DNA of 64,000 nucleotides from the IMG/VR virus record IMGVR_UViG_3300048672_001051, positions 165,657 through 229,656 of that record, one strand, 5' to 3'. The translations under genes were made by a program, and so were the position numbers. Below are positions 1,194-63,071 of the stretch, one piece after another; position 1 is the first letter of the stretch; every line of letters starts with the position of its first letter. A model generated the notes under the pieces. The model did no database searches. It was not told the origin of the DNA and worked only from the letters and a program-made list of their open reading frames with translations.

Positions 1194-1203
1194 ACATGCT
1201 TAT

Positions 1204-2387: not shown

Positions 2388-2425
2388 ATTTAAATATTTC
2401 TCTAAATTATAATACTTAAATGCTT

Positions 2426-2890: not shown

Positions 2891-2891
2891 A

Positions 2892-3278: not shown

Positions 3279-3295
3279 ACTTTAAACCTGTAACT

Positions 3296-3649: not shown

Positions 3650-3650
3650 A

Positions 3651-4827: not shown

Positions 4828-4828
4828 A

Positions 4829-5266: not shown

Positions 5267-5286
5267 TATAAATCTCTAAATTTTAA

Positions 5287-5697: not shown

Positions 5698-5714
5698 TAT
5701 AAAGTCCTTAGTAG

Positions 5715-6104: not shown

Positions 6105-6105
6105 A

Positions 6106-6531: not shown

Positions 6532-6546
6532 AATTTGTAATAATCC

Positions 6547-6927: not shown

Positions 6928-7409
6928 AAGTCTCTCAATCTTAAGTTTTTTGGGGCGTAGCAGTCTGGTTTAAATAAAAATTTAAATTTTATAGACTGGG
7001 CTTCGTATACAGTACCGTGTGACCCAGTAAATTTTGTTTGAAAATGTTTAGAATATGTATGCACTACTAACCCTACGTTGTTTAAATTTTTACCATTTGC
7101 GTAATAACTACAGTTTTCTTTATAATAATATCCAGACATATTTAAATTAAGTCTAAAATAGGTTGGAAGTTGATAATTTATATATCTTGCATACCCCCAA
7201 AATTTTTTAAAATCTTTGTCCATAAAAAATTTTAAAAGTTTATCGTATTTTGCGCTTGATACCGTGTCTAGTGCATAAAAATATTGCAAAACTTTTAAAG
7301 GATTAACAATAACTGTGTAGTTAAAGCTTTTATAAAAAAGCATTAAAGTTTTTGTAGAATTATCATATATCTTAATATTTAAAATATAGTTTATAAGCTT
7401 ATTAAACAT
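6924..7409 (-). CDS. LRxL-array paralog
   Basis: FWGYARY, SHG, LRDL end. Confidence 0.8.
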   Translation of the reverse strand: MFNKLINYILNIKIYDNSTKTLMLFYKSFNYTVIVNPLKVLQYFYALDTVSSAKYDKLLKFFMDKDFKKFWGYARYINYQLPTYFRLNLNMSGYYYKENCSYYANGKNLNNVGLVVHTYSKHFQTKFTGSHGTVYEAQSIKFKFLFKPDCYAPKNLRLRDL

Positions 7410-7411
7410 AG

Positions 7412-7810
7412 TTATAAGTACCTTAAATTTGAAATATGTATAAGGTCACCGTCTAGATAATAAGCTACCTCAGAGGAGTTGTGCTGATATGTGCCGTGCC
7501 TTGAAGAGTTTTTTAAAAAATAATTAAAATAATATTTATTGCTTTTAACTAAGCCAATTAAATCTCTAGCTGTATTTATAGTGTATAGTGCGTTTTCACC
7601 CGGAGTGTTTGCACTCCCCGCTACATTATAAAAGTTAGTTAATTCATAAAAATGTACTATATATCTTAAATATTTTAAAGCTTCGTTAAACATTAAATTT
7701 TTAATATAGTCTTCAGCAGTTTTTATATGACTAAAGTGTATCTGAGGTATTTGTTTTAAAATTTTTAAAATCTGCTGAGGTTTTAAATTATTAAAATCTG
7801 TTGTAATCAT
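7412..7810 (-). CDS. LRxL-array paralog
   Basis: RHG, YLDG, LRYL end. Confidence 0.8.
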   Translation of the reverse strand: MITTDFNNLKPQQILKILKQIPQIHFSHIKTAEDYIKNLMFNEALKYLRYIVHFYELTNFYNVAGSANTPGENALYTINTARDLIGLVKSNKYYFNYFLKNSSRHGTYQHNSSEVAYYLDGDLIHISNLRYL

Positions 7811-8178
7811 AAATTCCTTAAACCTGTATACGGTATTTTTTTACCCATCAGATATAACCTTGTATTCTTGCGATCAACATCATCTTTAAAACTTCCATGT
7901 TGCATATTATTACTTGTAAAATATTTTAAATATTTATATTCTAAATAGCCGACTTTATAAAAATCCTTAGAAGTGCCTATAAAAAAAGTATGCCAATTAT
8001 TAATATCTCTAGTTTGACCGGTTTTAAATTTGCCTAGGTTTAGATGAGGAATTAAATAATATCTAGCGCGCTCCCAAAATAATTTAATATCATTTGTAAG
8101 GTAAATTTTATTCAGTGCATTAAAAATTGAAGCATATTTTAAATATTCTAAAACTTTTTCTGGTGTGTCGTAAATCAT
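7807..8178 (-). CDS. LRxL-array paralog
   Basis: FWERARY, QHG, LRNL end. Confidence 0.8.
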   Translation of the reverse strand: MIYDTPEKVLEYLKYASIFNALNKIYLTNDIKLFWERARYYLIPHLNLGKFKTGQTRDINNWHTFFIGTSKDFYKVGYLEYKYLKYFTSNNMQHGSFKDDVDRKNTRLYLMGKKIPYTGLRNL

Positions 8179-8190
8179 TTTATAAGCCTA

Positions 8191-8622
8191 TTAAAGATTT
8201 CTTAAAGTAGTTTTTAAACTTAACTTTTGTCCATAAATATAGTGAAAAGCTGAAGTAATTTTATAATATTCAAAAATGTTGATATCAAAAAATTGTCCAT
8301 GAGGCAAACTTGCAGTGTAGTAACCTTTTTTTGTAGCCCTTTTATAAAGTCCAAATCTTTCTGAGTTATTTTTAATATAATAGTTTGGTGCGTCATTATA
8401 GTCGAACGCTACATAACCTTTAGCAGTATGTGAATTTAAAAATTTTGCATCTAAGCGCCAACGCATAGTGTTAATATATCTAATATTATTCCAAAAATTA
8501 TTTAAATCATCGTTAATAATATTTGTAACTAATTTTTCATAAGTTTTATTATTAAGATTATTTTTTATATATTTTAAAATATCAAATATTTCTCGAGCTT
8601 CTTCAACACTTACTTTACCCAT
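8191..8622 (-). CDS. LRxL-array paralog
   Basis: FWNNIRY, PHG, LRNL end. Confidence 0.8.
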   Translation of the reverse strand: MGKVSVEEAREIFDILKYIKNNLNNKTYEKLVTNIINDDLNNFWNNIRYINTMRWRLDAKFLNSHTAKGYVAFDYNDAPNYYIKNNSERFGLYKRATKKGYYTASLPHGQFFDINIFEYYKITSAFHYIYGQKLSLKTTLRNL

Positions 8623-8623
8623 A

Positions 8624-9013
8624 TTATAATTCCTTTAAAGCTACATTTAAAATATTATTGTTAACCAACAACTCGTAACGTCGCCTATTTAGTTTTGTTG
8701 TTGCAGGTAAAACTCTACCATTCATAAAAGTTTTATGACTGCGGTTGGCTATTACGAGGCCAACTTTTAAGTTATTACTTTTTATGTAAAAAGTGCTTAA
8801 CATACTATGAGTTATAACAAAAGCTTTACCGATGTTGTAAATACCTAAATCAATTTTTAATTTATAATAGGATTTTATTCCACGCGCAAACATCCAAAAT
8901 AACTTATCGTTTTTAGATAACAATTCACGTCTTAGCTTATAAAATTCTAAATAAACTTGAGAATGATTTCTTAAAAGTTCATCCATAAATTCTTCAGGTG
9001 TGTCAAAAACCAT
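8624..9013 (-). CDS. LRxL-array paralog
   Basis: FWMFAR, LKEL end. Confidence 0.8.
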   Translation of the reverse strand: MVFDTPEEFMDELLRNHSQVYLEFYKLRRELLSKNDKLFWMFARGIKSYYKLKIDLGIYNIGKAFVITHSMLSTFYIKSNNLKVGLVIANRSHKTFMNGRVLPATTKLNRRRYELLVNNNILNVALKEL

Positions 9014-9025
9014 TGCATAATGCTC

Positions 9026-9412
9026 CTATATATATCTTAAATTATTTACATTCAAATTTGAACCATTAATAAAATATACACCTGAAACTTTACTAAATCC
9101 GTTTAGCATGTTTTTATTATAAAAAGAACTCGAAGAATCACGGTTGTGTAGTCCAAATTTTACAAAATTTTTTTTAAAATAGTAAAAATTTCTAAAAGAG
9201 TTGCTTGCAAAACGTCCGGTAGATATTTTAGAATTTTTACTGACAGGTTCTAAATCTAAAATACAGTTATTAGTATATCGGATAATTTCCCAAAACTTTT
9301 TATAATCACCTTCGTTAATACTATTTAATAATCTTACACAGAAAGAGTCTTTAGCGCCTAAATTATTTTCAATATATTTAACTATATTAAATATTTCTAC
9401 AACTTCAGTCAT
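9026..9412 (-). CDS. LRxL-array paralog
   Basis: FWEIIRY, FING, LRYI end. Confidence 0.8.
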   Translation of the reverse strand: MTEVVEIFNIVKYIENNLGAKDSFCVRLLNSINEGDYKKFWEIIRYTNNCILDLEPVSKNSKISTGRFASNSFRNFYYFKKNFVKFGLHNRDSSSSFYNKNMLNGFSKVSGVYFINGSNLNVNNLRYI

Positions 9413-9414
9413 AA

Positions 9415-9789
9415 CTACAAATCTCTTAATTTTAAAAATTTTGGTAAAGGTTTATTATCAATAATAAACCTACCCCTAGTATTTTGTCCGTGATAGCAGT
9501 CATTTTTAAAATATTGTACTTTACGGTCATTATAATGTTTTCCAAATCTCTGTCGACGACTGTTTACATAAAATTTATCGTTAAATAAACTGTATTTTGC
9601 AAAACCAGCTTTACGTTTATCGGATAAAATTTTTAACTCTTGAGTAAATTCAATATGTCTACAAATTTTCCAAAAATCTTCTAAAGATTTTTGGAAAATA
9701 ACTTCAAGAATTTTTTTAAGACCGGGAGATTTATTACCCAAGCTTTTTTGAAATTCTTTATATGTTTGAAATATTTCTTCATGATCCAT
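9415..9789 (-). CDS. LRxL-array paralog
   Basis: FWKICRH, YHG, LRDL end. Confidence 0.8.
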   Translation of the reverse strand: MDHEEIFQTYKEFQKSLGNKSPGLKKILEVIFQKSLEDFWKICRHIEFTQELKILSDKRKAGFAKYSLFNDKFYVNSRRQRFGKHYNDRKVQYFKNDCYHGQNTRGRFIIDNKPLPKFLKLRDL

Positions 9790-9790
9790 T

Positions 9791-10216
9791 TTATATATAC
9801 CTTAAGTTTTTTACAGATAGAGGTCGGCCATTAATAATAATTCCAGTTTCACTGCTAGTACCATGATACTGACTATTATTAAAAAAATTTAATTCGCCAT
9901 TCCAGTTATCAAAACCTAAAATACAATGGTCTTTAACATAATTAGTTACAGTTAAAGTTTTACCAGAAATAGCTTTACCAGTAGGATATTTATTAAATAT
10001 CCTACTTAGGTTTAGCTCTTCATTTAAATTTAAATTTAAATAAATATGTCTAACTACACACCAAAACAAATTTATATTTGGAGGTTCAGCCAAAAGGCTT
10101 AGTCTTAATACTTCAACACTAACTTGTGTATCATAAGCTAAAGAATCGTAACAGTTATCTTCAGCTATAAGATTATTAATATAGTTTAAAAATTCTTCAC
10201 ATTCTAATATGTCCAT
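9791..10216 (-). CDS. LRxL-array paralog
   Basis: FWCVVRH, YHG, LRYI end. Confidence 0.8.
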   Translation of the reverse strand: MDILECEEFLNYINNLIAEDNCYDSLAYDTQVSVEVLRLSLLAEPPNINLFWCVVRHIYLNLNLNEELNLSRIFNKYPTGKAISGKTLTVTNYVKDHCILGFDNWNGELNFFNNSQYHGTSSETGIIINGRPLSVKNLRYI

Positions 10217-10596
10217 TATAAATACCTTAAGTTAGTAACATTGCACGCGACAGCATTTACATAAAATCTTCTTGTGTGTTGACAATAACCGTGAACTTTA
10301 CCTAAAAATCTAGCGCGGTACAAATAGCCTGATACTCCTGGGAGCCGAATAACGCCAAAAACTATAGAATTACTATTTACGTAAATTTTAAGGTCTTCAG
10401 CATGTCGGTTACAGACTCCAGCTTCATATTCATATAGTGTAAAAGTAAAATTACATAAATATTTAAAGTATCTTGCAACTTCCCAAAATCTTTTGAAAGA
10501 CTTTTTAATTAAAAGATTTTCCAAATATTCATAATCACGGTGGCTTAAGTGTATAAATCTTTCTAAAACTTCAGTTGCTTTTTGAAACTCACTCAT
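10216..10596 (-). CDS. LRxL-array paralog
   Basis: FWEVARY, VHG, LRYL end; start placed at MSEFQ. Confidence 0.8.
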   Translation of the reverse strand: MSEFQKATEVLERFIHLSHRDYEYLENLLIKKSFKRFWEVARYFKYLCNFTFTLYEYEAGVCNRHAEDLKIYVNSNSIVFGVIRLPGVSGYLYRARFLGKVHGYCQHTRRFYVNAVACNVTNLRYL

Positions 10597-10598
10597 TC

Positions 10599-10982
10599 TT
10601 ATAAATACCTTAAATTTGAACATTGAATATAAATATTTTTTATATAAAATTCAGGGTTAGTCAGACTGCCTGAGCAGCCATGTAAAGTATCATTCACGTG
10701 AAATTGCTTTTTTTCGCAGTAGTTGTGTCGCCCAATTCTTTTAAAATTACTGTTAAAATAACAAAATTTTTTGTCTGTTAAATCTAGACTATATCCACTA
10801 TTATATTTTCCAAAAGATACGTCGTACCTAAAACCGTGCTTAATATAACGAGCTACACTCCAAAATTTTTTTAAGTCTCCAGTTATTAAAATATTATTTA
10901 AAGTTTTTAATATACGTGTTGGGTACTTAAGTGTAGCCATATGGTCTATTATTACGTTTGGATCTTCAATAACTTGTAACAT
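10599..10982 (-). CDS. LRxL-array paralog
   Basis: FWSVARY, LHG, LRYL end. Confidence 0.8.
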   Translation of the reverse strand: MLQVIEDPNVIIDHMATLKYPTRILKTLNNILITGDLKKFWSVARYIKHGFRYDVSFGKYNSGYSLDLTDKKFCYFNSNFKRIGRHNYCEKKQFHVNDTLHGCSGSLTNPEFYIKNIYIQCSNLRYL

Positions 10983-10983
10983 T

Positions 10984-11346
10984 TTAAAGCTCTCTTAATT
11001 TTAAATCGTAAATTGGCTTACCGTTAATTTTGAAACCTAAATAACCTGTGCCATGCAATTTATCTTTATTTACAAACAAATGTCCAATTAAACATTTGTT
11101 TAGACCTACTCGCTCACTTTTTGAATTTACGTAAAAAGTTATTTGACTACTCATATTTTGTGAAAAACCAGAAGTGTGTGAATTTAACTTTAAGTGTGGA
11201 CACAGACCTTTTAAAAACCTTGCATATATCCAAAAAAATTTAGTATCACAACTTTTAACAATAGCTTTTAAATTTTTAAAAATAGTGTCATTAGACTCAA
11301 ACTTAATTTCGTTTAAAAAAGTTAATATTTCTAATTCTTGATTCAT
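10984..11346 (-). CDS. LRxL-array paralog
   Basis: FWIYARF, LHG, LREL end. Confidence 0.8.
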   Translation of the reverse strand: MNQELEILTFLNEIKFESNDTIFKNLKAIVKSCDTKFFWIYARFLKGLCPHLKLNSHTSGFSQNMSSQITFYVNSKSERVGLNKCLIGHLFVNKDKLHGTGYLGFKINGKPIYDLKLREL

Positions 11347-11348
11347 GC

Positions 11349-11732
11349 TTATAAATGCCTTAAACTTGTTATAGGTCGACTATTACTTTTTATATAAAAT
11401 TTTTTTGTAAAATTAGAATAGCCGTGTGCATAACCGTCAAGTCTAAATGTTTCACAAGATTTTCTCTCTAAAAGAAAAGTTTTACCAAATTTTCTGCCAG
11501 TACTATTTAAATAGTAAGCCCAATTATTATCTGATCTTTTGGCAAGACCAGACTCATATTCATATAATCCAATAGGAAGTCTTGATTCATATTTAATATA
11601 TCTAGCTATTTCCCAAAATATTTTAAAGCATTTCTGCTTTAAAATATAATTAAGATTAATGCAAATAATTTTGTAGCGCGCAAAATTTTCAAAATATTCT
11701 AAAACTCTGGTTGCTTTTTCAGATTCATTCAT
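11349..11732 (-). CDS. LRxL-array paralog
   Basis: FWEIARY, AHG, LRHL end. Confidence 0.8.
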   Translation of the reverse strand: MNESEKATRVLEYFENFARYKIICINLNYILKQKCFKIFWEIARYIKYESRLPIGLYEYESGLAKRSDNNWAYYLNSTGRKFGKTFLLERKSCETFRLDGYAHGYSNFTKKFYIKSNSRPITSLRHL

Positions 11733-11733
11733 A

Positions 11734-12132
11734 TTACAAGTACCTTAAGCTATTAACATGGTTAATAAAATTATTTAAAAAATATTTTTGCATAGTAAAA
11801 TTATAACCGTGAAGTTTGTTTTGAATAGTGAAATAACGTTGAGGATCTTTTCTATTGTCAACAACTTTACCTACTCGTCTGCTAATAGAATTAACATACG
11901 CATAGTAGGTATTTGAGCTGTTTATAGCTTTTCCAGCGCTATATTCTGCTAAGTCTAAAGTTATTAAAGATTGATATTTTAATTTCAAATATCTTACATA
12001 CTCCCAATAACGTTTAAAAATTCCTGTCTTTAAACCAAAATTATATTGCTCAGTTAAAAACTGCAAATTAAATTTCTCTTTAGAATTTTTAATTTGCATA
12101 AAAATATTTGCACCAAATGTCAAAACATTCAT
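11734..12132 (-). CDS. LRxL-array paralog
   Basis: YWEYVRY, LHG, LRYL end. Confidence 0.8.
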   Translation of the reverse strand: MNVLTFGANIFMQIKNSKEKFNLQFLTEQYNFGLKTGIFKRYWEYVRYLKLKYQSLITLDLAEYSAGKAINSSNTYYAYVNSISRRVGKVVDNRKDPQRYFTIQNKLHGYNFTMQKYFLNNFINHVNSLRYL

Positions 12133-12135
12133 CAG

Positions 12136-12570
12136 TTAAAGCTCTCTTAATTTTAAATTAAAAACATCTTCGTCATTAACACTAAATCCGAGACTATGAG
12201 TACCATGGCAGGTACTGTCTGTACAGTAGTACTTATGATCATCTGACGAGATATGCAAACCTATTGTAAAATTATCAGATTTTATATAACTAGTTGTTAT
12301 AAGTTTTATCGGATCTATAATAGCACCTACTGGGTACTTATTATAAAATTTATCTAAGTCTGCGTACCAACTAAATATATCATATGCATATCTGACTACG
12401 CCCCAAAAAAAGACTGAATTTAGAGGTTTTTGAGTTGCAATAAAATCTAGCCTATTTACAATATCTATAAGTGTTGGTGAACACTCACCTTCAATACTTA
12501 TTTTCACTATCTCTAAAACTTCTTTGAAGTATTTAACAACCTCTAAACACTCTTTTAATTTCAAATCCAT
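12136..12570 (-). CDS. LRxL-array paralog
   Basis: FWGVVRY, CHG, LREL end. Confidence 0.8.
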   Translation of the reverse strand: MDLKLKECLEVVKYFKEVLEIVKISIEGECSPTLIDIVNRLDFIATQKPLNSVFFWGVVRYAYDIFSWYADLDKFYNKYPVGAIIDPIKLITTSYIKSDNFTIGLHISSDDHKYYCTDSTCHGTHSLGFSVNDEDVFNLKLREL

Positions 12571-12571
12571 A

Positions 12572-12964
12572 CTATAAATGCCTTAAATGCAGGTCAATCA
12601 TGTCGCCATTAATAATAAAATAACTTTTATCGAGAGTATTACTTTGTCCATGGCTTGTACCTTTAAAACGAAAGCTGTGAGTTTTAATCCAGCCGGCTGC
12701 TACACAATTACCTAGTCTTATACCTGAAGTTGTACAGTAAAATTTTCCAAAAAATTTATTTGGTACTTGGCTAAAACCTTCAGAATATTTTTTTAAATCT
12801 ACATTTTTCGTATGACAATTTTTTAAATAACGAGCTGCTTGCCAAAATACTTTAGCACTTCTTTCAATATTAATGACATTTAATAAAATTTTATAAGCTT
12901 CCTCATTTTCTTTTTTAAAGTCTGTTAAAACTTTAAAAATTTCTAACGCTTGAACTTCATTCAT
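12572..12964 (-). CDS. LRxL-array paralog
   Basis: FWQAARY, SHG, LRHL end. Confidence 0.8.
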   Translation of the reverse strand: MNEVQALEIFKVLTDFKKENEEAYKILLNVINIERSAKVFWQAARYLKNCHTKNVDLKKYSEGFSQVPNKFFGKFYCTTSGIRLGNCVAAGWIKTHSFRFKGTSHGQSNTLDKSYFIINGDMIDLHLRHL

Positions 12965-12966
12965 AT

Positions 12967-13347
12967 TTACAGATACCTGAGAGATTTGATACGATTAGGA
13001 ATACCGTTTAAATAATATTTTTTATCTATTTGGTCATAGCCGTGAAGCTCACCTTTAATATAAAAATATTCACGATTATCAAAAATAGCGCGACCAAATC
13101 TTTCGAGAGAGCTTGATAAATATCCTGGACGTCTAGACTCTGAATTAAATATAGGTCCAGCAGTGTATTCTTTTAAATCTATTTCATGTCCAGCACACGC
13201 TTTAAAAAATCTCAGTATCATCCAGTATTTTTTAAAATTGGCAGTTTTTAATGCCAATTTAAATTCGTCTTTTAGTTCACTGCCTAGCTTATGACGCGTG
13301 TCCGGAATAAGTTGAAAAATATGCTGTGCAAATAGTTCTTCTCTCAT
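12967..13347 (-). CDS. LRxL-array paralog
   Basis: YWMILRF, LHG, LRYL end. Confidence 0.8.
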   Translation of the reverse strand: MREELFAQHIFQLIPDTRHKLGSELKDEFKLALKTANFKKYWMILRFFKACAGHEIDLKEYTAGPIFNSESRRPGYLSSSLERFGRAIFDNREYFYIKGELHGYDQIDKKYYLNGIPNRIKSLRYL

Positions 13348-13799
13348 TATAACTCTCTTAGTCTTAAAGTATTTTTTAGTGCGCGATCATTTATATTGAA
13401 ACTAATACTATTATTAATACTGCAAGTCCCATGCTTCATATCTTTAAGTCTATAACTTGTACTCTCCAAGTAATAATCCAAACCTATTAGTTTAAAATCT
13501 GTTGTAAGATAACTTACAATTTTTAAATCTGTCGGTGATCTAGCCAAACCTGCAGGATATTTATTTAAAGTTTTGTCGAAATAATAAAAATAATTTGCCA
13601 AATTTAAATAGACATAACGGGTTATCTGCCAAAAACAAATAATACTTGGACTAGGAGATTTAAAAATGTAGTCTAAAATTTTACAAGCAAGCGATAATTC
13701 ATCAATATATTTTATACGAACATTTTTAAGCATTTCAGGCGTTTCTAAATATTCTTTAAAATATCTTAAGATTTTTTCAGAGTCTTCTAGTTGTGTCAT
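13347..13799 (-). CDS. LRxL-array paralog
   Basis: FWQITRY, KHG, LREL end. Confidence 0.8.
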   Translation of the reverse strand: MTQLEDSEKILRYFKEYLETPEMLKNVRIKYIDELSLACKILDYIFKSPSPSIICFWQITRYVYLNLANYFYYFDKTLNKYPAGLARSPTDLKIVSYLTTDFKLIGLDYYLESTSYRLKDMKHGTCSINNSISFNINDRALKNTLRLREL

Positions 13800-13801
13800 A
13801 A

Positions 13802-14179
13802 TTACAAATCTCTCAGTTTTAAATTAGAATTTAAAACACAATTATTTATTTTTAAAATAAATATTTTTGAAGCCTTATTAACATACACGCCGTGCATTCC
13901 ACCGTTATTTTGAAAAAATTTTAAATTAATATTGTCATATTCGCCGAAAGACCTGAGATAACTATTAAAATAATATTTTCGATTAGTGCCAGGCGATACA
14001 TACAAACCAGCTCTTGTTAGAAAATTTGGCCGTACTGGACGGCCAACATCATATTGTAATTCTCTTAAAACACCTAGGAATTTAGTTGTCTCACCGTCAG
14101 CTAACATTTTTAAACATAAAATATATGCATACGTATTTTTCGGAATATTTTGTAATAAATCTAAAAATAATATTTTCAT
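13802..14179 (-). CDS. LRxL-array paralog
   Basis: FLGVLR, MHG, LRDL end. Confidence 0.8.
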   Translation of the reverse strand: MKILFLDLLQNIPKNTYAYILCLKMLADGETTKFLGVLRELQYDVGRPVRPNFLTRAGLYVSPGTNRKYYFNSYLRSFGEYDNINLKFFQNNGGMHGVYVNKASKIFILKINNCVLNSNLKLRDL

Positions 14180-14586
14180 TATAAATGCCTTAATTCTCTA
14201 GTTTTTACATCACGGCTGTTAATAATAAAAATAAAGCCTCTCTCAATGTCAAAAACCCCATGTTTTCGACTTTGTTTGTAATGCCTTCTAGCTACACTAT
14301 TAAATTTAGCCATACCAATTACTTTGTCTTGTTTGTTTACATAATAATGATAATTACCTAATATTGATGTAGCTAAGCCTGAACGCATGTGGCCTATATC
14401 TACACCCGAAGGCTTTATAGCTTTATGGTAATTATAATGTCTAATAATCTCCCAAAATTTTTTAAAATTGTTAGTAGCAATTAAACTTTCTAATTTTCTA
14501 GTAGTTTTTTTGTCAATACTTGGTTGATTATACTCTTGTATAATTTTTAAAATTTCATAAGGATTTGTAGTAATCATTTGCCACAC
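14179..14586 (-). CDS. LRxL-array paralog
   Basis: FWEIIRH, KHG, LRHL end. Confidence 0.8.
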   Translation of the reverse strand: MWQMITTNPYEILKIIQEYNQPSIDKKTTRKLESLIATNNFKKFWEIIRHYNYHKAIKPSGVDIGHMRSGLATSILGNYHYYVNKQDKVIGMAKFNSVARRHYKQSRKHGVFDIERGFIFIINSRDVKTRELRHL

Positions 14587-14598
14587 CTTTGTTAATAT

Positions 14599-14985
14599 TT
14601 ATAAATACCTTAGATTTTTTTTGTAAAAAAAATCATTATTAATATACATGGTAGTAATATTATTCAGGAAAGCCATGCCGTGAAAATAATTATTTTTAAA
14701 AAATAAACATTCTTTATTAATACCAGTCTTGTGTAAACCTATTCTTAAGCCTAAGGAGTTAATATAAAAACTTTCATTGCCTGAGTTTAGGCTAACAAAA
14801 CCGCTTGCCTTACTTCCTAGCGGTATTTTTAAATCATAATTTTGATTAACATACCGACATACTTCCCAAAATTTTTTAGTATTATTTTGATAAATCAATT
14901 GTGATAGTATTGCAGGGTAATCTTTTAAAGTAATATACTTTTTTGTATATTTTTCAACTTCTTTTATAATTTCTAAGGGTTGCAT
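14599..14985 (-). CDS. LRxL-array paralog
   Basis: FWEVCRY, FHG, LRYL end; start placed at MQPLE. Confidence 0.8.
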   Translation of the reverse strand: MQPLEIIKEVEKYTKKYITLKDYPAILSQLIYQNNTKKFWEVCRYVNQNYDLKIPLGSKASGFVSLNSGNESFYINSLGLRIGLHKTGINKECLFFKNNYFHGMAFLNNITTMYINNDFFYKKNLRYL

Positions 14986-14987
14986 TT

Positions 14988-15383
14988 CTAGAGATTCCTT
15001 AAAGACTTTGTTGGGCATTCAGAATTATTAATATAATTTTGAAAATAAGAATTCACAGTACGAACTCCGTGTAATTTTCTATTTTTAAAAAATAATTTTG
15101 CTTTATGATGGATTGATAAACCCACCACCTTACCTTTACTATTTAAATAGTAACTACTAGATAAGTTATGCATACAAGCTAAGCCCACTAAACGTGGGCC
15201 TGTAATATATTTTAAATCAAATTCATTTTTTAAATATCTGTACAGTTCCCAAAATTCTTTAACATTTTTAGTAGTACTTAAAAGATTGTAAACATAATGA
15301 TTACAGTCAGCAGGATCTTTTAAAATTAATTTTAAAAGATCATATATTTCAATAATTTCGTGTTGTTCAATTGTCTTAGTCAC
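14988..15383 (-). CDS. LRxL-array paralog
   Basis: FWELYRY, LHG, LRNL end. Confidence 0.8.
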   Translation of the reverse strand: MTKTIEQHEIIEIYDLLKLILKDPADCNHYVYNLLSTTKNVKEFWELYRYLKNEFDLKYITGPRLVGLACMHNLSSSYYLNSKGKVVGLSIHHKAKLFFKNRKLHGVRTVNSYFQNYINNSECPTKSLRNL

Positions 15384-15752
15384 TTATAAATACCTTAAGC
15401 TCCGCCATGTCAGTAAATTGCCTTTAAGCCAGAATTTATGAAATCTATCATCGCAACCATGCCTATAGCCTTGACAATAAAAAACTCTATCTCGAGAGTT
15501 TCTTGCAAATCCAAATTCTCTAGCTTCTCTATTAATATAACTTAAAAAATTAGAATTAGAGTTATAAATTTTACCAGCAGTATACTCACCTAAAATTAAA
15601 TTAAACTTTTCTGTTTTTTTAATTCTACGAGCTACACTCCAAAATTCTTTAAAATTTTGGTTAAGAAGACATTCTTGCAAAAGTCTAGTGTCAATATGGT
15701 AACTAAATCTTAAGTGGTCTAAAACATTTTTAGCTGATTCTAATTCAGTCAT
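15384..15752 (-). CDS. LRxL-array paralog
   Basis: FWSVARR, RHG, LRYL end. Confidence 0.8.
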   Translation of the reverse strand: MTELESAKNVLDHLRFSYHIDTRLLQECLLNQNFKEFWSVARRIKKTEKFNLILGEYTAGKIYNSNSNFLSYINREAREFGFARNSRDRVFYCQGYRHGCDDRFHKFWLKGNLLTWRSLRYL

Positions 15753-15753
15753 A

Positions 15754-16230
15754 TCATAAATACCTTAGCCTAGTCACATTACTTCGTATTCCATCAATAT
15801 AAAAATCAGGTGCATTGAATCTTTTATATGCGCCATGTCTAATATTATTTTTAAAATAACATGATTCATTATCAGACCTTTGACACAGACCTATCATGCC
15901 ACTATTTTTTAATTTATAATAAAAATTATTATAACGCATAAACTTACCATTAAAATAATGTTGTAAGTTTATTTCAGGGCAATAAGAAGTACTAATATAT
16001 TTTATTTTAGGCCAAAAATTTTTGGTATTATTGTCTGATAGAGCATTTTTAAAAAGTCGCAAAATATCTACAGACTTTAAAGATCTTTGATAAACAGTTC
16101 TAACTATATCTTCACGAGTGTGACACTTTTTTAAAATTTCTTTTGTATTACAAGGATTGTAAAAAAAAGGAAAAGGACTTGGTGACAATATGGTTGAATA
16201 AGCCATAGACGTAATATCTGTAGGGTACAT
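15754..16230 (-). CDS. LRxL-array paralog
   Basis: FWPKIKY, RHG, YIDG, LRYL end. Confidence 0.8.
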   Translation of the reverse strand: MYPTDITSMAYSTILSPSPFPFFYNPCNTKEILKKCHTREDIVRTVYQRSLKSVDILRLFKNALSDNNTKNFWPKIKYISTSYCPEINLQHYFNGKFMRYNNFYYKLKNSGMIGLCQRSDNESCYFKNNIRHGAYKRFNAPDFYIDGIRSNVTRLRYL

Positions 16231-35975: not shown

Positions 35976-36992
35976 TTAAGTAGCCATTCGAGGATCATGG
36001 TTAAATTCTCCTGCACGAATTTCACGATTGGCCTTCCAAGCTAGCCACGGAGATTTGATGACTTGCCATAGACCAAGGCCTGTACCGACTCCTAGGATGC
36101 TGATAGCACTTGCTGCTGCAATCAAGATTGTTTTAATGCCAGCCCATACAGCATCAAGCCAAGCTAATGCTGTATCGCGCCAGCGACTGAACATACGCTT
36201 TACTTTACCTTCAGCGACAACTTCACCATCTTCGTTGTAGAAATAGACAAGGCCTGTCTTTTCGTCAACGCTTACGCTAGTGTCGTCAGTTAGATTTAGG
36301 TGATGTTCGCCTGCAGGTGGCTCATTGGCTGCGTCTGGATCGACATAATCATCTTCAGGTGGTACTACTGCGTCTTTGATTGTATCAGCAACATCAGCAG
36401 CTTTATCCGCCAGAGTTTCAGCAGAGTCTTGTACGATGCCAGCAGCGGCATCAATCGAGTCGATAGCAGCAGTTTCCAACTTATAAGTGTTAGTTGGTTC
36501 AACTGCTTTTTTCGCAGCTGGAGGCTTTTTAACTGCTTTAGCAGCCTTAGCTTCTGCAACCAACTTTTCAGATTCTTCCAGTGACACAGGTCCGGCGGGT
36601 GTCGTAGGTAGTACTTCTTTGTAATCAAACTCGCTAGTAATAAACTTAGCGACTTCGATAATACTTAGAGGTGTCTCTGAATTGATATTTTCTTTGAGTA
36701 GCTTTTCACGAGCTTTGTCAAAGAATGGTTTCAGCATAGCCTGCTTAGATTTTAACGCGACAATTCGCCCAATATGGCCGTTGACCAGATTGATATACAG
36801 CTTGGGCATATTTTGTTGGTCACACTCAATCAAATGAGCAGCAGCCAGTTTGATAGTGAGCTCAACAACGGCTTGGGTACGTTCTTGATTGCTATTCGCA
36901 GCTGCCGGCGTAAGCGTTTGCAGGACTTTGATGTTTTTGTTGATCTCATCAACAACAACCAGAACATTGTTTGAATCGGTTTTGTTAGTCAT
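35976..36992 (-). CDS. Hypothetical protein, low-complexity linker and C-terminal membrane anchor
   Basis: Ala/Lys/Asp-rich middle; hydrophobic C-terminal segment; GGAG SD. Confidence 0.75.
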   Translation of the reverse strand: MTNKTDSNNVLVVVDEINKNIKVLQTLTPAAANSNQERTQAVVELTIKLAAAHLIECDQQNMPKLYINLVNGHIGRIVALKSKQAMLKPFFDKAREKLLKENINSETPLSIIEVAKFITSEFDYKEVLPTTPAGPVSLEESEKLVAEAKAAKAVKKPPAAKKAVEPTNTYKLETAAIDSIDAAAGIVQDSAETLADKAADVADTIKDAVVPPEDDYVDPDAANEPPAGEHHLNLTDDTSVSVDEKTGLVYFYNEDGEVVAEGKVKRMFSRWRDTALAWLDAVWAGIKTILIAAASAISILGVGTGLGLWQVIKSPWLAWKANREIRAGEFNHDPRMAT

Positions 36993-40172: not shown

Positions 40173-40868
40173 TCATTTAGTAGAACCTTCGGCATTCAAA
40201 AAGTTTTTAAACTTTTTATGCCAGTCTTCTGTTGATAGATTGAACACTGGAATATCAAAGTGTTCTGCCAGACAAATTTGCAATGAGCAGTTACGTGTTA
40301 ACTCACTGCAATCAGCAGCTACTGTTTCACCATAATATGTTGCACATAAAACTGCATCAATAGGTGAACACAGGTCAGTGCCTAAGATTTCGAATACACT
40401 ACGAATTGCATATTGTTGTGCATTAAAACCTAAGTCACGACCTTTAGCTAACATTGAAGCCCAACCCTTATGGTGTCTTTGGGCAAGTTTACGAGCTTCA
40501 TTCCACAGCTCAGTTTTGTACATCATGTGATATACAGCTGTGCTAGTGTCAAGAGTCCACCCATAATTATCATAAGGTAGGTATATGTTCAAAGCTGTTT
40601 TAGAAAGTTTACCTTCTGCAATAGCTTTTACAAATCCTGCTTGAAATGCTTCTTCTGCCCCTCTAGAATTTCCTGTGTTCAGAGTGACAGTCATGTTCAA
40701 CTCTGGTCGAGAATGTTCAAGAGTGGCTAACCAATAAGACAGTTTTCCAATATTAGTTATTACTTCAGGTTCTAATGTTTTAAGATTATCCGTACCCAAT
40801 CCTGCTAAAGTCAATTTCTTCATACAGTTTATCTTAACCTCTGCTGTTGTGAAAGGAATGAGTTTCAT
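40173..40868 (-). CDS. Second, diverged SLOG/DprA-like protein
   Basis: LNTGNSRGAEEAF, IYLP, RSVFEILG, IPVFNL; paralog of 31131-31736. Confidence 0.65.
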   Translation of the reverse strand: MKLIPFTTAEVKINCMKKLTLAGLGTDNLKTLEPEVITNIGKLSYWLATLEHSRPELNMTVTLNTGNSRGAEEAFQAGFVKAIAEGKLSKTALNIYLPYDNYGWTLDTSTAVYHMMYKTELWNEARKLAQRHHKGWASMLAKGRDLGFNAQQYAIRSVFEILGTDLCSPIDAVLCATYYGETVAADCSELTRNCSLQICLAEHFDIPVFNLSTEDWHKKFKNFLNAEGSTK

Positions 40869-57366: not shown

Positions 57367-57552
57367 TTAAGCTGCAAGAGCTTTGATGGCCATTTGATGA
57401 TCAATCATCGCCTCAGCAGCATCGTGCAGATGCTCAGACAATAATGACCAGTCGATTAGTTGATCTTTAGTGTTACAATCAACGGCGTAGGTAACGAAGT
57501 TCAACAAAGGAAGAAAATCCTTTGCTGAAACTTTAACTGCGCAGGCCAGCAT
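57367..57552 (-). CDS. Hypothetical protein
   Basis: TAATG overlap with the upstream gene; AAGG SD. Confidence 0.55.
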   Translation of the reverse strand: MLACAVKVSAKDFLPLLNFVTYAVDCNTKDQLIDWSLLSEHLHDAAEAMIDHQMAIKALAA

Positions 57553-58334
57553 TATGCTGCTACCTTCAAGGCAGCACGCAGGGAGCGGCTTGTAAGAGCC
57601 GCTGCGTTTGCACTCAAGCCATATACCGCCTCAAAGTCGCTGGCAGCCAGAGCTGCTTTCTTACTCAGAGCTGCAACGCGTGCAGCTCCTGCTTTGGTGA
57701 CAACACCACCGTCTTGGGCCGCAACCCACACGAGGTGGGCGCGGGCCTTTTCAGCACGCTTGACCATACGCAGGATTTCTCCTGCGGTTTTGACAGCTTC
57801 TGCTGTCAGTTTACGAGCAGCTGGCGTTGCAGCTTTGACAGCTGCAACTTTAGCTTTTGGTACATACACTTCCGCCGCAAGACGGTGGGTGTACACGTTT
57901 CGACGTACATCCCGGGCTTTGAAGCCAGTGCCACGTTTGGCACGTTTGGCTGCCTTGATGCCACAAGCGTGGCTGCCTGTCGCAGCGATTGCTGCGACCA
58001 CTGCCTTACGGCGAGCGGTTACAACCTCACGGGCGCTGTGCCCGTACTTAGCCGCAACAGCGGCGCTTGCGGCCTTACGGGCTACATTACGTGCAGCACG
58101 TGCAGCAGCGCTGGCTATGTTGCCAGCACGGGTTTTGCTACCGTCCGAACGACGGTTACGTTTGGTGCGTGCTGCGTTACGAGCAGCCTTGCGAGCTGCT
58201 CCTTCAAGTGCACCGTCAATGATGCTTGGGTAAACCCAAGCACCAGCAACTTCGTTAACAAGTTGGGTGTCAAAATCGACACCCATGATGACTGCGAGTA
58301 GTGCAAGCACTGACTCGATGAAGAAATTTTCCAT
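57552..58334 (-). CDS. Very basic Ala/Arg/Lys-rich early protein (histone H1-like composition)
   Basis: AARKAARNAAR-type repeats; AAGGAG SD before MENFF; hydrophobic N-terminus. Confidence 0.7.
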   Translation of the reverse strand: MENFFIESVLALLAVIMGVDFDTQLVNEVAGAWVYPSIIDGALEGAARKAARNAARTKRNRRSDGSKTRAGNIASAAARAARNVARKAASAAVAAKYGHSAREVVTARRKAVVAAIAATGSHACGIKAAKRAKRGTGFKARDVRRNVYTHRLAAEVYVPKAKVAAVKAATPAARKLTAEAVKTAGEILRMVKRAEKARAHLVWVAAQDGGVVTKAGAARVAALSKKAALAASDFEAVYGLSANAAALTSRSLRAALKVAA

Positions 58335-58409
58335 GATTTTGCTCCTTAACAATGAGGTTGGGATCATTAAACCCAAACTGCCTAGTACAGTGGGATAGGA
58401 TAACTAGGA

Positions 58410-58464
58410 TGCTGTTTCGTCCTTGATTGGACTCATCAGTTAGGCAAAGAAGCCTAATACAGCA
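58410..58464 (-). ncRNA. Hammerhead ribozyme, type III (HH-A)
   Basis: Minus strand reads UGCUGU A | UUAGGC uucuuu GCCUAA CUGAUGA GUCC aaucaa GGAC GAA ACAGCA. Complete CUGAUGA/GAAA core, GUA cleavage triplet, three perfect stems. Predicted cut between 58458 and 58457. Confidence 0.93.
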
Positions 58465-58502
58465 GGTAGTTTTTTATAGAAGCATACCTAGGCTTCTCTC
58501 TC

Positions 58503-58670
58503 TTATTTAAGCGCGAGGATTTCTCCTGTGCGCTTAATGAAGAACAGATTAAACCCAACAACTTCCGAAGAAGTTGTTGGGTTGACAATGCTAGCTACGA
58601 ACACGCCTTGGCCGTGCACGGCCAAGGCGTGTGTGTAGTCAGCGACTACGCGAACTTTTGGCTTGTTCAT
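58503..58670 (-). CDS. 55-aa early protein between HH-B and HH-A (not in ORF track)
   Basis: AAGGAG SD; MNKPKVRVVADYTHALAVHGQGVFVASIVNPTTSSEVVGFNLFFIKRTGEILALK. Confidence 0.65.
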   Translation of the reverse strand: MNKPKVRVVADYTHALAVHGQGVFVASIVNPTTSSEVVGFNLFFIKRTGEILALK

Positions 58671-58755
58671 ATGATTTTCTCCTTGAATGAAAGGCTCATT
58701 ACACCTTATCTCTACCTAGTATCGAGATGAATTTATCTAGGATGCTGATGTTACA

Positions 58756-58829
58756 TGTTTGCCTCATCAGTGCATAAGGAACAACCTATATGCAGACGCC
58801 CTTATAAGAATCTATAAGGGCGTTTCGGC
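58756..58829 (-). ncRNA. Hammerhead ribozyme, type II (HH-B)
   Basis: Minus strand: GCC GAAA CGCCCUUAUA gauucu UAUAAGGGCG UC | UGCAUAuAGG uuguu CCUUAUGCA CUGAUGA GGC aAACA. GUC triplet, cut 58795/58794. Loop I UGUU can pair with the 3' tail AACA. Confidence 0.9.
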
Positions 58830-58830
58830 C

Positions 58831-59247
58831 TTATTTCTGGAGCTTATCTAGCTCCTCAGCGAGGAGGTCGCTAAGCTCAACTTTGATCAGCGCTAGCTGA
58901 TCAAGACGGGTGTGGTGACGCGCGTGATACGCGTCATTGAGGGCCTCTTGATGTTCCTTGCGGAACGAGGTCGTAACCTCCTCATGGTAGTACGAGTGGA
59001 GTTTGTACACCAAACTTATTGCATCCTCTCGGGATGCAATTGCAGTGAGAGCCCATTCACGGGCCATCAGCGAACGGCCAGTATTAAGACGGTCAAGACC
59101 GTCACGGACAGCAGCCTCGTACAGTGCTTTGCGAGCAGCGCTCGCATTGTCACGGATGGCGGTGGTACGTTTGGCGTTGCTTGGAGCAACCTCCAGAATA
59201 ATGACGAGCAATGCCAACAACAAGAGTACAACACAATATGACAACAT
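58831..59247 (-). CDS. Membrane-anchored early protein between HH-C and HH-B
   Basis: N-terminal hydrophobic segment; AAGGA SD. Confidence 0.7.
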   Translation of the reverse strand: MLSYCVVLLLLALLVIILEVAPSNAKRTTAIRDNASAARKALYEAAVRDGLDRLNTGRSLMAREWALTAIASREDAISLVYKLHSYYHEEVTTSFRKEHQEALNDAYHARHHTRLDQLALIKVELSDLLAEELDKLQK

Positions 59248-59280
59248 AATGGTATTCCTTTGGTAAGACAGTGATAGACA

Positions 59281-59344
59281 GGTTTGCCTTCATCAGTGCA
59301 TGAGTAACCAACTCATACAGACCTTACAATGTAAGGTTTCGGCA
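59281..59344 (-). ncRNA. Hammerhead ribozyme, type II (HH-C)
   Basis: Minus strand: UGCC GAAA CCUUAC auu GUAAGG UC | UGUAUGAGU ugguu ACUCAUGCA CUGAUGA A GGCA AACC. GUC triplet, cut 59320/59319. One extra A after the core; loop I GGUU can pair with tail AACC. Confidence 0.88.
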
Positions 59345-59388
59345 CAACCCTTTACTTATATACCACCAAGGGTTGGGTGGTCAGTGGA

Positions 59389-59460
59389 TCATTTGTACTC
59401 AGGGAAGAGTACTTTGATCCACTGCTCGTTCTCTAGAACGAGGATTTGAATTTGGTCCAT
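59389..59460 (-). CDS. 23-aa leader ORF (putative)
   Basis: AGGAG SD; MDQIQILVLENEQWIKVLFPEYK. Confidence 0.45.
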   Translation of the reverse strand: MDQIQILVLENEQWIKVLFPEYK

Positions 59461-59762
59461 GACTGGACTCCTATTCAGGTATTGAATCATGTTTGATTAG
59501 GCAATGATCCTTAGCCTTTGAAACGGGGGTAGGGGGCTCAACAGATGGTACCCCCCTATGTTTCCGAGGGTACCCACCCTATACAACACCTAGTCCACAA
59601 AAATAAAAATATTATTTTTAAGATTTTTTAAAGGAATTTTTTAAAGGAAACAAAAATATTTGGGGGTGGGGGCTAAAAACTAACTTTATCTTTGTATGCT
59701 ATCAACTTATTTCAAAAATAATATTTATATAAAATAATAACTATATAAGTATTATTTATACA

Positions 59763-59791
59763 TTGATTTTTATTCAAAACTAGCTCATAAT
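59763..59791 (+). promoter_or_regulatory. sigma70-like promoter
   Basis: TTGATT-17 bp-CATAAT upstream of the 59857 gene. Confidence 0.45.
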
Positions 59792-59856
59792 GTTAAAAAC
59801 AATTCTACTATTTTTATAGTAGGGAAACTATAACTATATTATGGAGGCTGTTAACG

Positions 59857-62315: not shown

Positions 62316-63071
62316 ATGACAGCATATATAAATAATGATGTATACACATCACACTTTTTTACAGCATTATCAACAATGTTCCCAGATGGTGAATTGTTTT
62401 TTGTAGAGGCAGTACGAGCAGTACGAGACTTAGTAAAAACACCTGAACTAAAAGAAGACATTAAAAGATTTATTAAACAAGAAGCTATGCATCGAAAAGA
62501 GCATACTAAGTTTAATAAGATGTGGTGGGAGTTAGGCTACAGAACAGACAAGCTAGAGGCTGCAACACGAGCACTTCTTGGCTTGTCTAAAAAGCTTAAG
62601 TTGAGTAACAAATCTAACTTAGCTATAACTGTAGGTTTAGAACATTTTACAGCCACATTATCAGCTATGTTTTTAAGTACAGCAGAACTTAGAGATGGAC
62701 TAGACGATAAATATAAAGACTTATGGCTTTGGCACACTTCAGAAGAAATTGACCACAAGTCAGTAGCTTTTGAAGTGTACCAAGAAATTTTTGGAGATGA
62801 CTCAAACGTATCTGCTTATTTATATAGAGTTCTCTATATGACTCTAGTTACAATAGCTATATTAATAGCTGTACACAAATATACATACACGCTACTTAAA
62901 GATGATAATACAAATACTGTATTAACTATTTTAAAAGGCTTGAACAAAACTTGGGGTGTAAATGGGTATATCTCTAAACTAATTCCAGATATCTTGGATT
63001 ATTATAGACCCGGTTTTCACCCTGCAGATCATGACCACAGAGAGCTTTTAATAAAGTACTTTAAAGGATAA
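62316..63071 (+). CDS. Predicted metal-dependent hydrolase (ferritin-like diiron, PF10118-like)
   Basis: ALSTMFPDGELFF, QEAMHRKEH, LEHFTA, WHTSEEIDHKSVAF, PGFHP. Confidence 0.85.
   Translation: MTAYINNDVYTSHFFTALSTMFPDGELFFVEAVRAVRDLVKTPELKEDIKRFIKQEAMHRKEHTKFNKMWWELGYRTDKLEAATRALLGLSKKLKLSNKSNLAITVGLEHFTATLSAMFLSTAELRDGLDDKYKDLWLWHTSEEIDHKSVAFEVYQEIFGDDSNVSAYLYRVLYMTLVTIAILIAVHKYTYTLLKDDNTNTVLTILKGLNKTWGVNGYISKLIPDILDYYRPGFHPADHDHRELLIKYFKG

What the first reader, a model, noticed from the sequence alone, without database searches (positions are those of the whole stretch)
58756..59344. Compensatory change supports a loop I/3'-tail pseudoknot in the two type II hammerheads
HH-B has loop I UUGUU and tail aAACA; HH-C has loop I UGGUU and tail AACC. 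The U-A pair becomes a G-C pair. Stems I and III differ in sequence yet keep pairing. This points to selection for an active fold rather than chance. HH-C also has an extra A after CUGAUGA, a variant known from a viroid hammerhead (CChMVd plus strand).
Basis: partly seen in the sequence, partly recalled or inferred. Interest (0 to 1): 0.6.

Follow-up and report, generated by a model that had tools for sequence, protein, structure and literature searches.

The report
Phage type II hammerheads with pseudoknot

Summary
On the minus strand, HH-B (58829..58756) and HH-C (59344..59281) are complete type II hammerheads. Loop I pairs with the 3' tail just after stem II: UGUU/AACA in HH-B and GGUU/AACC in HH-C, a U-A to G-C swap in the same register. 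A type III hammerhead (58464..58410) lies downstream. These are the only three hammerhead parses in the 229.7-kb virus record; shuffled genomes give 0.05 type II parses.

The pseudoknot is real. In 12 distinct close relatives from metagenomes, 3 of its 5 pairs show double changes and 93% of cells pair; slid controls give 35-50% for the whole structure. Across 446 viral and metagenomic type II hammerheads, 53% show at least 4 Watson-Crick pairs, against 10% with permuted tails.

It is also already known. Perreault et al. 2011 described this pseudoknot and proved it by mutation and rescue. They also reported hammerheads flanking small phage genes.

HH-B and HH-C belong to two older sublineages found in unrelated contigs, so the swap predates this phage. 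HH-C's extra A after CUGAUGA is a recurrent phage variant (U far more often than A, C rare), matching the CChMVd A10 data.

Verdict: new members of a known kind. Self-cleavage was not tested.

The parts
59281..59344 (-). HH-C, a type II hammerhead. Stem II UGCC/GGCA, GAAA, stem III hairpin (59337-59321), C17 at 59320 (cleavage between 59320 and 59319), stem I hairpin (59319-59297), CUGAUGA plus an inserted A (59296-59289), tail AACC (59284-59281).
   Evidence: Rfam RF02276 31.1 bits, E 4.7e-5 in a local search. 97.7% identical over 43 nt to hammerheads in L157, L243 and L269.
59306..59310 (-). HH-C loop I, UGGUU. GGUU pairs with the tail AACC (59284-59281).
58756..58829 (-). HH-B, a type II hammerhead. 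Stem II GCC/GGC, GAAA, 12-bp stem III hairpin (58823-58796), C17 at 58795 (cleavage between 58795 and 58794), stem I hairpin with one bulged U (58794-58771), CUGAUGA (58770-58764), spacer A 58760, tail AACA (58759-58756). It starts 2 nt after the stop codon of the 138-aa ORF.
   Evidence: (RF02276 35.4 bits). About 92-95% identical to three copies in L186.
58780..58784 (-). HH-B loop I, UUGUU. UGUU pairs with the tail AACA (58759-58756).
58410..58464 (-). HH-A, a type III hammerhead. Stem III UGCUGU/ACAGCA, GUA cleavage triplet (A17 at 58458), stem I 6 bp, stem II 4 bp. It is the third ribozyme of the cluster.
   Evidence: RF00008 28.8 bits; 36 bits, E 4e-7 in the genome.
58831..59247 (-). ORF of 138 aa flanked by HH-C and HH-B, with a hydrophobic N-terminus and no known family. 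The predicted processed RNA runs 59319..58795 (525 nt).
   Evidence: No Pfam or PHROG hit. No relatives in viral contigs or phage records.
58503..58670 (-). ORF of 55 aa flanked by HH-B and HH-A, preceded by AAGGAG. It contains three strong hairpins. The predicted processed RNA runs 58794..58458 (337 nt).
   Evidence: (z = -8.98).
58745..58750 (-). CAUCAG, complementary to CUGAUG of the HH-B core. It could form an alternative hairpin that competes with the active fold or forms after cleavage.
   Evidence: MFE of HH-B plus flank uses this pairing. (ATCAG moderately enriched just after stem II in other type II hammerheads).
57552..58334 (-). First large gene after HH-A, a basic Ala/Lys/Arg-rich protein. 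I read the start as the ATG at 58334 behind AAGGAG; the ORF listing instead gives a TTG start at 58376 (274 aa).

Best explanation
HH-B and HH-C are genuine type II hammerhead self-cleaving ribozymes in the RNA of a minus-strand operon of an uncultured jumbo phage. The record is 229.7 kb and this run of minus-strand genes begins near 59,500. In each ribozyme, four nucleotides of the stem I loop pair with the four nucleotides that follow stem II. This pseudoknot holds stems I and II side by side, which is what lets this class cleave fast at cellular Mg2+ levels.

Shown here: the anatomy, the conservation and the covariation.

Inferred: as the long transcript is made, each ribozyme cuts after C17. 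Together with the type III HH-A, this would split the leader of the operon into discrete RNAs of 525 nt (138-aa ORF) and 337 nt (55-aa ORF), plus the downstream message.
- Each upstream product would end in the stem III hairpin with a 2',3'-cyclic phosphate.
- Each downstream product would start with a 5'-OH and the stem I hairpin ahead of its ribosome-binding site.
- This would uncouple the stability and translation of neighbouring cistrons, much as engineered ribozyme insulators such as RiboJ do (my own knowledge, not checked here).

The U-A versus G-C difference is real covariation at the family level. HH-B and HH-C come from two pre-existing sublineages that also occur, sometimes together, in unrelated phage contigs.
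For: - **Canonical anatomy.** Cores, stems and topology are canonical when read directly. The hammerhead fold is the MFE and centroid structure of each isolated sequence.
- **Not chance.** These are the only hits in the whole genome, against 0.05 expected. All three are intergenic, on the coding strand, within 935 nt.
- **Family membership by homology.** Close relatives of both pass the Rfam RF02276 gathering score: L186 at 41.3 and 39.5 bits, L209 at 41.6 and 37.2, L166 at 49.3, L199 at 45.5, L187 at 42.2.
- **Pseudoknot covariation.** In alignment A2, 3 of 5 pseudoknot pairs have double changes (G-C 9 / U-A 3; G-C 11 / A-U 1; U-A 9 / C-G 2 / G-C 1) and 93% of cells pair. For the whole structure (stem I plus pseudoknot), slid controls give 35-50% paired against 95.8%, and 0 of 500 shuffles reach the covariation score.
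- **Family-wide test.** At least 4 Watson-Crick pairs in 52.7% of 446 unique type II hammerheads, against 9.9% with permuted tails (maximum 13.9%). There are 82 distinct pseudoknot strings. HH-B and HH-C have the modal geometry.
- **Literature.** PMC3088659 gives the pseudoknot of loop I with the 3' tail, loss of activity on disruption, rescue by compensation, and multiple hammerheads flanking phage genes. PMC8782182 shows type II hammerheads near phage genes cleaving in vivo and in vitro. PMC6155905 notes hammerheads flanking small non-conserved ORFs.
- **The extra nucleotide.** It recurs with intact stems and pseudoknots.
Against: - No cleavage or expression data exist for this locus.
- Both score below the Rfam gathering threshold of 37 bits: 35.4 and 31.1.
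- The pseudoknots are minimal. Each has 4 bp, and HH-B's has three A-U pairs. The nearest relatives have 5 bp. In PMC3088659, shortening a pseudoknot from 6 to 4 bp cut the rate about 20-fold.
- HH-C's inserted A moderately slowed the viroid ribozyme (PMC3705267).
- HH-B's core can pair with a downstream CAUCAG. That alternative fold is about 4 kcal/mol more stable than the nested hammerhead fold when the flank is included.
- The biological role of phage hammerheads is still an open question in the literature (PMC6155905).
Confidence: 0.85

Rival explanations
1. The two motifs are chance matches or decayed relics that no longer cleave, and the loop-tail complementarity is coincidental.
For: Rfam scores are below the gathering threshold. 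There are only 4 pseudoknot pairs. A single covarying pair between two sequences could arise by chance with a probability of the order of 0.1-0.3 (my estimate).
Against: 0.05 parses are expected per shuffled genome against 2 observed, adjacent and co-oriented. The cores are intact. Close relatives score above the Rfam threshold. The subfamily shows covariation. Placement is intergenic, directly after a stop codon and ahead of ribosome-binding sites.
Confidence: 0.03
2. HH-B is active, but HH-C is disabled or strongly slowed by the extra A between A9 and G10.1. It persists only as a structural or neutral element.
For: A10 lowers the trans-cleavage rate in CChMVd (PMC3705267, PMC1636495). The nearest relatives of HH-C carry U at this position, not A. 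A is rarer than U in phage hammerheads: 35 stretches against at least 113.
Against: The effect in CChMVd is only moderate. At least 25 unique A-insertion hammerheads in viral contigs keep all stems, and 48% keep a pseudoknot of 4 bp or more, as often as those without an insertion at 43%. C is almost absent (1 against 108 U), which mirrors the activity ranking in the viroid and argues for selection on activity.
Confidence: 0.1
3. The 3' tail of HH-B is mainly part of a competing hairpin (CUGAUG with CAUCAG). The ribozyme would then be a switch that is on only during a short co-transcriptional window or under some signal, not a constitutive processor.
For: The MFE fold of HH-B with 15 nt more of flank uses this hairpin. 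ATCAG lies within 16 nt after stem II in 32 of 446 hammerheads, the top count among same-composition 5-mers (median 6). It occurs mostly in those without a pseudoknot. Relatives of HH-C also carry AUCAG about 14 nt downstream.
Against: The enrichment is moderate. Only 7 of 235 pseudoknot-bearing hammerheads have it. HH-C itself has AUCAC, a mismatch. The hairpin could equally form only after cleavage. The energy model ignores the pseudoknot and the tertiary core.
Confidence: 0.12

Closest known systems
Type II hammerhead ribozyme, Rfam RF02276 (Perreault et al. 2011, PMC3088659)
   Same: Open stem II. Stems I and III closed by loops. Canonical core. A pseudoknot of at least 4 bp between loop I and the nucleotides right after stem II. 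A short stem II of 3-4 bp. Phage context, with several ribozymes flanking small genes.
   Different: Scores are 35.4 and 31.1 bits, just under the gathering score of 37. Stems are AU-rich. The pseudoknots are minimal at 4 bp. HH-C has a one-nucleotide insertion in the core strand.
CChMVd (+) hammerhead with extra A10 (PMC3705267, PMC1636495)
   Same: An extra A between A9 and G10.1. The phage-wide ranking of the inserted base (U far more than A, C rare) parallels the viroid mutational ranking (U faster, A slightly slower, C and G detrimental).
   Different: The viroid ribozyme is type III, lives in a circular RNA replicon and uses loop-loop contacts. There, A10 also matters for the viroid's global fold. 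Here the ribozyme is type II in a DNA phage transcript.
Triple hammerhead arrangement in an Agrobacterium tumefaciens prophage region, and the three type II hammerheads of Desulfovibrio vulgaris (PMC3088659, PMC8782182)
   Same: Clusters of hammerheads a few hundred nucleotides apart that flank single small genes of phage origin. Cleavage was shown in vivo for those cases.
   Different: The genes are different and unrelated. Here the host is an uncultured jumbo phage, and the cluster mixes two type II with one type III.
Engineered ribozyme insulators such as RiboJ (own knowledge, not checked here)
   Same: A hammerhead placed just 5' of a ribosome-binding site that cuts off upstream RNA and leaves a 5'-OH and a hairpin.
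   Different: RiboJ is synthetic and derives from a type III satellite-RNA hammerhead. The analogy concerns function only.

Membership tests
Hammerhead ribozyme (core) | Conserved core: C3-U4-G5-A6-N7-G8-A9, G12-A13-A14, the A15.1-U16.1 pair, N17 not G, and the G10.1-C11.1 pair. | tested here: met
   HH-B matches at every position. HH-C matches at every position but has one extra A between A9 and G10.1.
Hammerhead type II (RF02276) | Topology: 5' and 3' ends in stem II, with stems I and III closed by loops. | tested here: met
   This is the MFE and centroid structure of each isolated sequence. The parser agrees.
Hammerhead type II (RF02276) | Pseudoknot of at least 4 bp between loop I and the nucleotides immediately 3' of stem II. 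| tested here: met
   UGUU/AACA and GGUU/AACC. Modal geometry. Covariation in 12 relatives. Family-wide enrichment of 52.7% against 9.9%.
Hammerhead type II (RF02276) | Score at or above Rfam's gathering threshold of 37 bits. | tested here: not met
   35.4 bits for HH-B and 31.1 bits for HH-C. Their nearest relatives score 37.2-49.3 bits and pass.
Hammerhead type II (RF02276) | Site-specific self-cleavage that yields 2',3'-cyclic phosphate and 5'-OH ends. | not testable with these tools
Activity is known for other members (PMC3088659, PMC8782182).
Hammerhead type III (RF00008), HH-A | Canonical core with the ends in stem III, and a score at or above 48.5 bits. | tested here: inconclusive
   The core and the three stems are canonical. 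The score is 28.8-36 bits, below the threshold.

The most novel reading that the evidence does not exclude
HH-B and HH-A may do more than trim an mRNA. They could release a 337-nt RNA (58794..58458) whose three long hairpins act at the RNA level. The hairpins are one with 27-nt arms, one perfect 14-bp stem with a C(UUCG)G tetraloop, and a third of 14 bp. The segment folds with z = -9. On this reading it is a ribozyme-excised structured or circularisable RNA of a jumbo phage, and the 55-aa frame is secondary or spurious.
Probability: 0.12. Interest if true: 0.6.

Novelty: new member of a known kind. Interest (0 to 1): 0.3.

Why it matters
The result adds two or three well-formed hammerheads to an uncultured jumbo phage whose neighbouring genes have no known relatives. 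The published type II pseudoknot rule holds in a fresh, AU-rich sublineage, with clean covariation.

Two by-products may interest ribozyme specialists more.
- An extra U or A (almost never C) after A9 is common in phage type II hammerheads. It follows the same base preference measured in a plant viroid.
- Near-identical ribozyme cassettes of 40-70 nt occur in phage contigs that share no flanking genes.

Neither changes the general picture. The biological role of phage hammerheads remains the open question.

Tried and rejected
- **Rfam at gathering thresholds.** No hit in the window. Hits appear only with E-value thresholds.
- **Orthologous loci through neighbouring proteins.** The 138-aa and 728-aa ORFs have no relatives in viral contigs. 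The 55-aa and 138-aa ORFs have no tblastn match in 50,697 phage records. No Pfam or PHROG family was found.
- **DNA similarity to phage records.** None was found for the 3-kb region or for either ribozyme alone.
- **Does the inserted nucleotide go with a longer stem II?** No association was found (odds ratio 1.19, p = 0.81).
- **The motif CAGCAUCCUAG** follows both HH-A and HH-B. A third copy at 36092-36102 lies inside an ORF and looks like chance.
- **L268** was left out of alignment A2 because its shorter stem I misaligned the loop.
- **No custom covariance model was built.** It would have been trained on sequences selected by a pattern that HH-B and HH-C already match, so the test would be circular.
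- **Complex prediction, structure prediction and the large protein searches** were not used, because no claim here depends on them.

Full report
**Where the window lies.** The window is the last 64 kb of a 229,656-bp IMG/VR virus record, estimated about 98% complete. It has no DNA match among 50,697 deposited phage genomes. From about 59,500 down to 248 every sizeable ORF is on the minus strand. The region of the finding sits at the very start of this long run, just downstream of an AT-rich divergent intergenic region at 59,600-59,850.

**What is in the sequence.** Read on the minus strand, the order is:
- A short ORF, 59490..59389.
- HH-C, 59344..59281.
- An ORF of 138 aa, 59247..58831.
- HH-B, 58829..58756, beginning two bases after that ORF's stop codon.
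- An ORF of 55 aa, 58670..58503.
- A type III hammerhead HH-A, 58464..58410.
- A gene for a basic Ala-rich protein, read here from the ATG at 58334.

HH-B and HH-C both have the type II layout: stem II 5' strand, GAAA, stem III hairpin, C17, stem I hairpin, CUGAUGA, stem II 3' strand, tail.
- HH-B: loop UUGUU, GGC-A-AACA.
- HH-C: loop UGGUU, GGC-A-AACC.

This gives UGUU/AACA and GGUU/AACC in one register, with a single U-A to G-C double change. Stem I keeps nine pairs, with two further double changes and one C-G to U-G change. Stem III is 12 bp in HH-B and 7 bp in HH-C, with unrelated sequence. Each isolated sequence folds into the three-way junction as both MFE and centroid structure, with z = -3.5, -2.7 and -3.6.

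**Is it more than chance?**
- Rfam finds nothing at gathering thresholds. With E-value thresholds it reports Hammerhead_II at 35.4 bits for HH-B and 31.1 bits for HH-C (gathering 37). It reports Hammerhead_3 at 28.8-36 bits for HH-A (gathering 48.5).
- I wrote a parser that requires the core, single-hairpin stems I and III, and at least 3 stem II pairs. It finds exactly these two type II sites, and the one type III site, in the whole genome. Twenty composition-preserving shuffles of the genome give 0.05 type II parses on average.
- All three sites are intergenic, on the coding strand, within 935 nt.

**The pseudoknot tested on relatives.** No related phage could be found through the neighbouring proteins, so I searched by ribozyme pattern.
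- A scan of viral contigs for GCC-GAAAC ... GUC ...
- A narrower scan fixed only the base of stem I, the core and GGC, leaving loop and tail free. It gave 113 metagenome stretches and 17 viral stretches.
- Among these I took the 12 distinct sequences with the same architecture as HH-B and HH-C (9-bp stem I, 5-nt loop), chosen without reference to the tail. They align without ambiguity (A2).
- On A2 the pseudoknot helix has 5 pairs, 3 of them with changes on both sides: G-C 9 / U-A 3; G-C 11 / A-U 1; U-A 9 / C-G 2 / G-C 1. In that helix 93.3% of cells pair.
- For the whole structure (stem I plus pseudoknot), sliding the 3' partner by 1-3 columns drops pairing from 95.8% to 35-50%. The covariation score is 0.462 against 0.188 ± 0.026 for shuffles, and 0 of 500 shuffles reach it.
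- The loop/tail combinations seen are UUGUU/AACAA, UGGUU/AACCA, UGGGU/ACCCA, UGGCU/AGCCA and UGAUU/AAUCA.
- Over all 446 unique type II hammerheads parsed from the fetched loci, 52.7% have at least 4 contiguous Watson-Crick pairs between loop I and the first 10 tail nucleotides. With tails permuted among ribozymes the figure is 9.9% (maximum 13.9% in 300 permutations). For at least 5 pairs it is 26% against 2.5%. There are 82 distinct pseudoknot strings.
- HH-B and HH-C have the modal geometry: stem II plus spacer of 4 nt, and 9 nt from the pseudoknot to C3.
- Close relatives of both pass the Rfam gathering score, at 37.2-49.3 bits.

**Origin of the U-A/G-C difference.**
- HH-C is 97.7% identical over 43 nt (stem I, core, insertion site, tail) to hammerheads in L157, L243 and L269. 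It is 87% identical over 69 nt to L161.
- HH-B is about 92-95% identical over 41-50 nt to three copies in L186, and 88% to one in L209.
- HH-B and HH-C match each other at only 83% over 24 nt.
- These other contigs share no protein or other DNA similarity with the window.
- L209 carries a B-like (UUGUU/AACAA) and a C-like (UGGUU/AACCA) ribozyme 300 nt apart.

The swap is therefore a true compensatory difference between two sublineages, but it predates this genome. The near-identity of freely variable stem I sequences in otherwise unrelated contigs suggests that short ribozyme cassettes move between phages.

**The extra A.** CChMVd (+) has A10 between A9 and G10.1. That A lowers the rate moderately, U raises it 3-4-fold, and C or G are detrimental (PMC3705267 and PMC1636495). 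In phages the insertion is not a defect peculiar to HH-C.
- A scan for the A form found 35 stretches.
- HH-C's nearest relatives carry U.
- Insertion-bearing ribozymes keep their pseudoknots as often as, or more often than, the rest: A 48%, U 69%, none 43%.
- The insertion is not linked to stem II length.

**What is known already.**
- Perreault et al. 2011 (PMC3088659) described natural type II hammerheads. [quoted passage not shown]
- They showed that disrupting it lowers k_obs 20- to more than 100-fold at 0.5 mM Mg2+, and that compensatory mutation restores activity.
- They noted multiple hammerheads flanking individual genes in prophages and proposed processing of long phage transcripts.
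- De la Peña et al. 2017 (PMC6155905) note hammerheads flanking small, non-conserved ORFs. [quoted passage not shown]
- Olzog et al. 2021 (PMC8782182) showed in vivo and in vitro cleavage of three type II hammerheads near phage-like genes.

The present locus fits all of this.

**Mechanism (inferred).** Co-transcriptional cleavage after C59320, C58795 and A58458 would release RNAs of 525 nt and 337 nt and the downstream message.
- Upstream products end with the stem III hairpin and a cyclic phosphate.
- Downstream products begin with a 5'-OH and the stem I hairpin.
- After the cut, only 3-4 stem II pairs hold the halves together.
- In the 446-member set, Shine-Dalgarno-like words dominate the first 20 nt after stem II: AAAGG in 114, AAGGA in 81, AGGAG in 60. 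These ribozymes therefore generally define the 5' end of a leader just ahead of a ribosome-binding site.

**Weak points.**
- There is no activity or expression evidence for this locus.
- The pseudoknots have only 4 bp.
- HH-B has a competing CUGAUG/CAUCAG hairpin.

**Verdict.** These are new members of a known kind, showing a known structural feature.

Noticed in passing
window 58465-58752 (minus strand); hairpins at 58643..58590, 58583..58552 and 58543..58501: The segment between HH-B and HH-A folds at -106.7 kcal/mol, with z = -8.98. Three strong hairpins lie inside the 55-aa ORF: one with 27-nt arms, one perfect 14-bp stem with a C(UUCG)G tetraloop, and a third of 14 bp. The ORF has a good AAGGAG ribosome-binding site but no relatives. 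It is unclear whether the RNA structure or the peptide is the functional product.
   Followed up: partly
loci L122-L156 and L286-L362, plus L004, L026, L100, L119 and L149: One extra nucleotide between A9 and G10.1 is common in viral type II hammerheads. U is far more frequent than A, and C is rare: 108 U to 1 C among unique hits of a capped scan, and 35 stretches with A. Stems and pseudoknots are intact. This parallels the CChMVd A10 mutational ranking. I found no mention of it for phage hammerheads in the searchable papers.
   Followed up: partly
L157:5519-5630, L243:2252-2363, L161:2982-3093, L186 (three copies), L209:1016-1444: Near-identical hammerhead cassettes (43 nt at 97.7%, 69 nt at 87%) occur in contigs that share no other DNA or protein similarity with this phage. 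L209 carries both a B-like and a C-like copy. This suggests horizontal spread of 40-70-nt ribozyme modules among marine and other environmental phages.
   Followed up: partly
window 58745-58750 (minus strand), and the 3' flanks of many fetched hammerheads: AUCAG, complementary to the core's CUGAU, lies within 16 nt after stem II in 32 of 446 type II hammerheads. That is the top count among same-composition 5-mers (median 6). It occurs mostly in the class with a 4-bp stem II and no pseudoknot, often directly abutting stem II. It may be an inhibitory hairpin or one that forms after cleavage.
   Followed up: partly
window 58404-58414 and 58737-58747 (minus strand): The 11-mer CAGCAUCCUAG, followed by a CCUAG...CUAGG hairpin, comes directly after both HH-A and HH-B. 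In HH-A, CAGCA is the 3' strand of stem III. This hints at duplication of a ribozyme-plus-leader cassette.
   Followed up: partly
window 248-16230 (minus strand): About 37 consecutive ORFs of 120-160 aa lie in a very AT-rich stretch (26-29% GC), against 44-50% GC at 48-58 kb. This looks like a large tandem array of small paralogous genes. It was not examined.
   Followed up: no
window 59345-59620 (minus strand): The leader upstream of HH-C, including G-run/C-run segments around 59520-59590, folds with z = -5.1. No Rfam family matched it.
   Followed up: no
window 62316-63071 (+) and 40173-40868 (-): These are among the few recognisable genes among those scanned: a predicted metal-dependent hydrolase (PF10118, 246 bits) and a DprA-like protein (phrog_768). 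Most of the other ORFs I scanned have no family.
   Followed up: no
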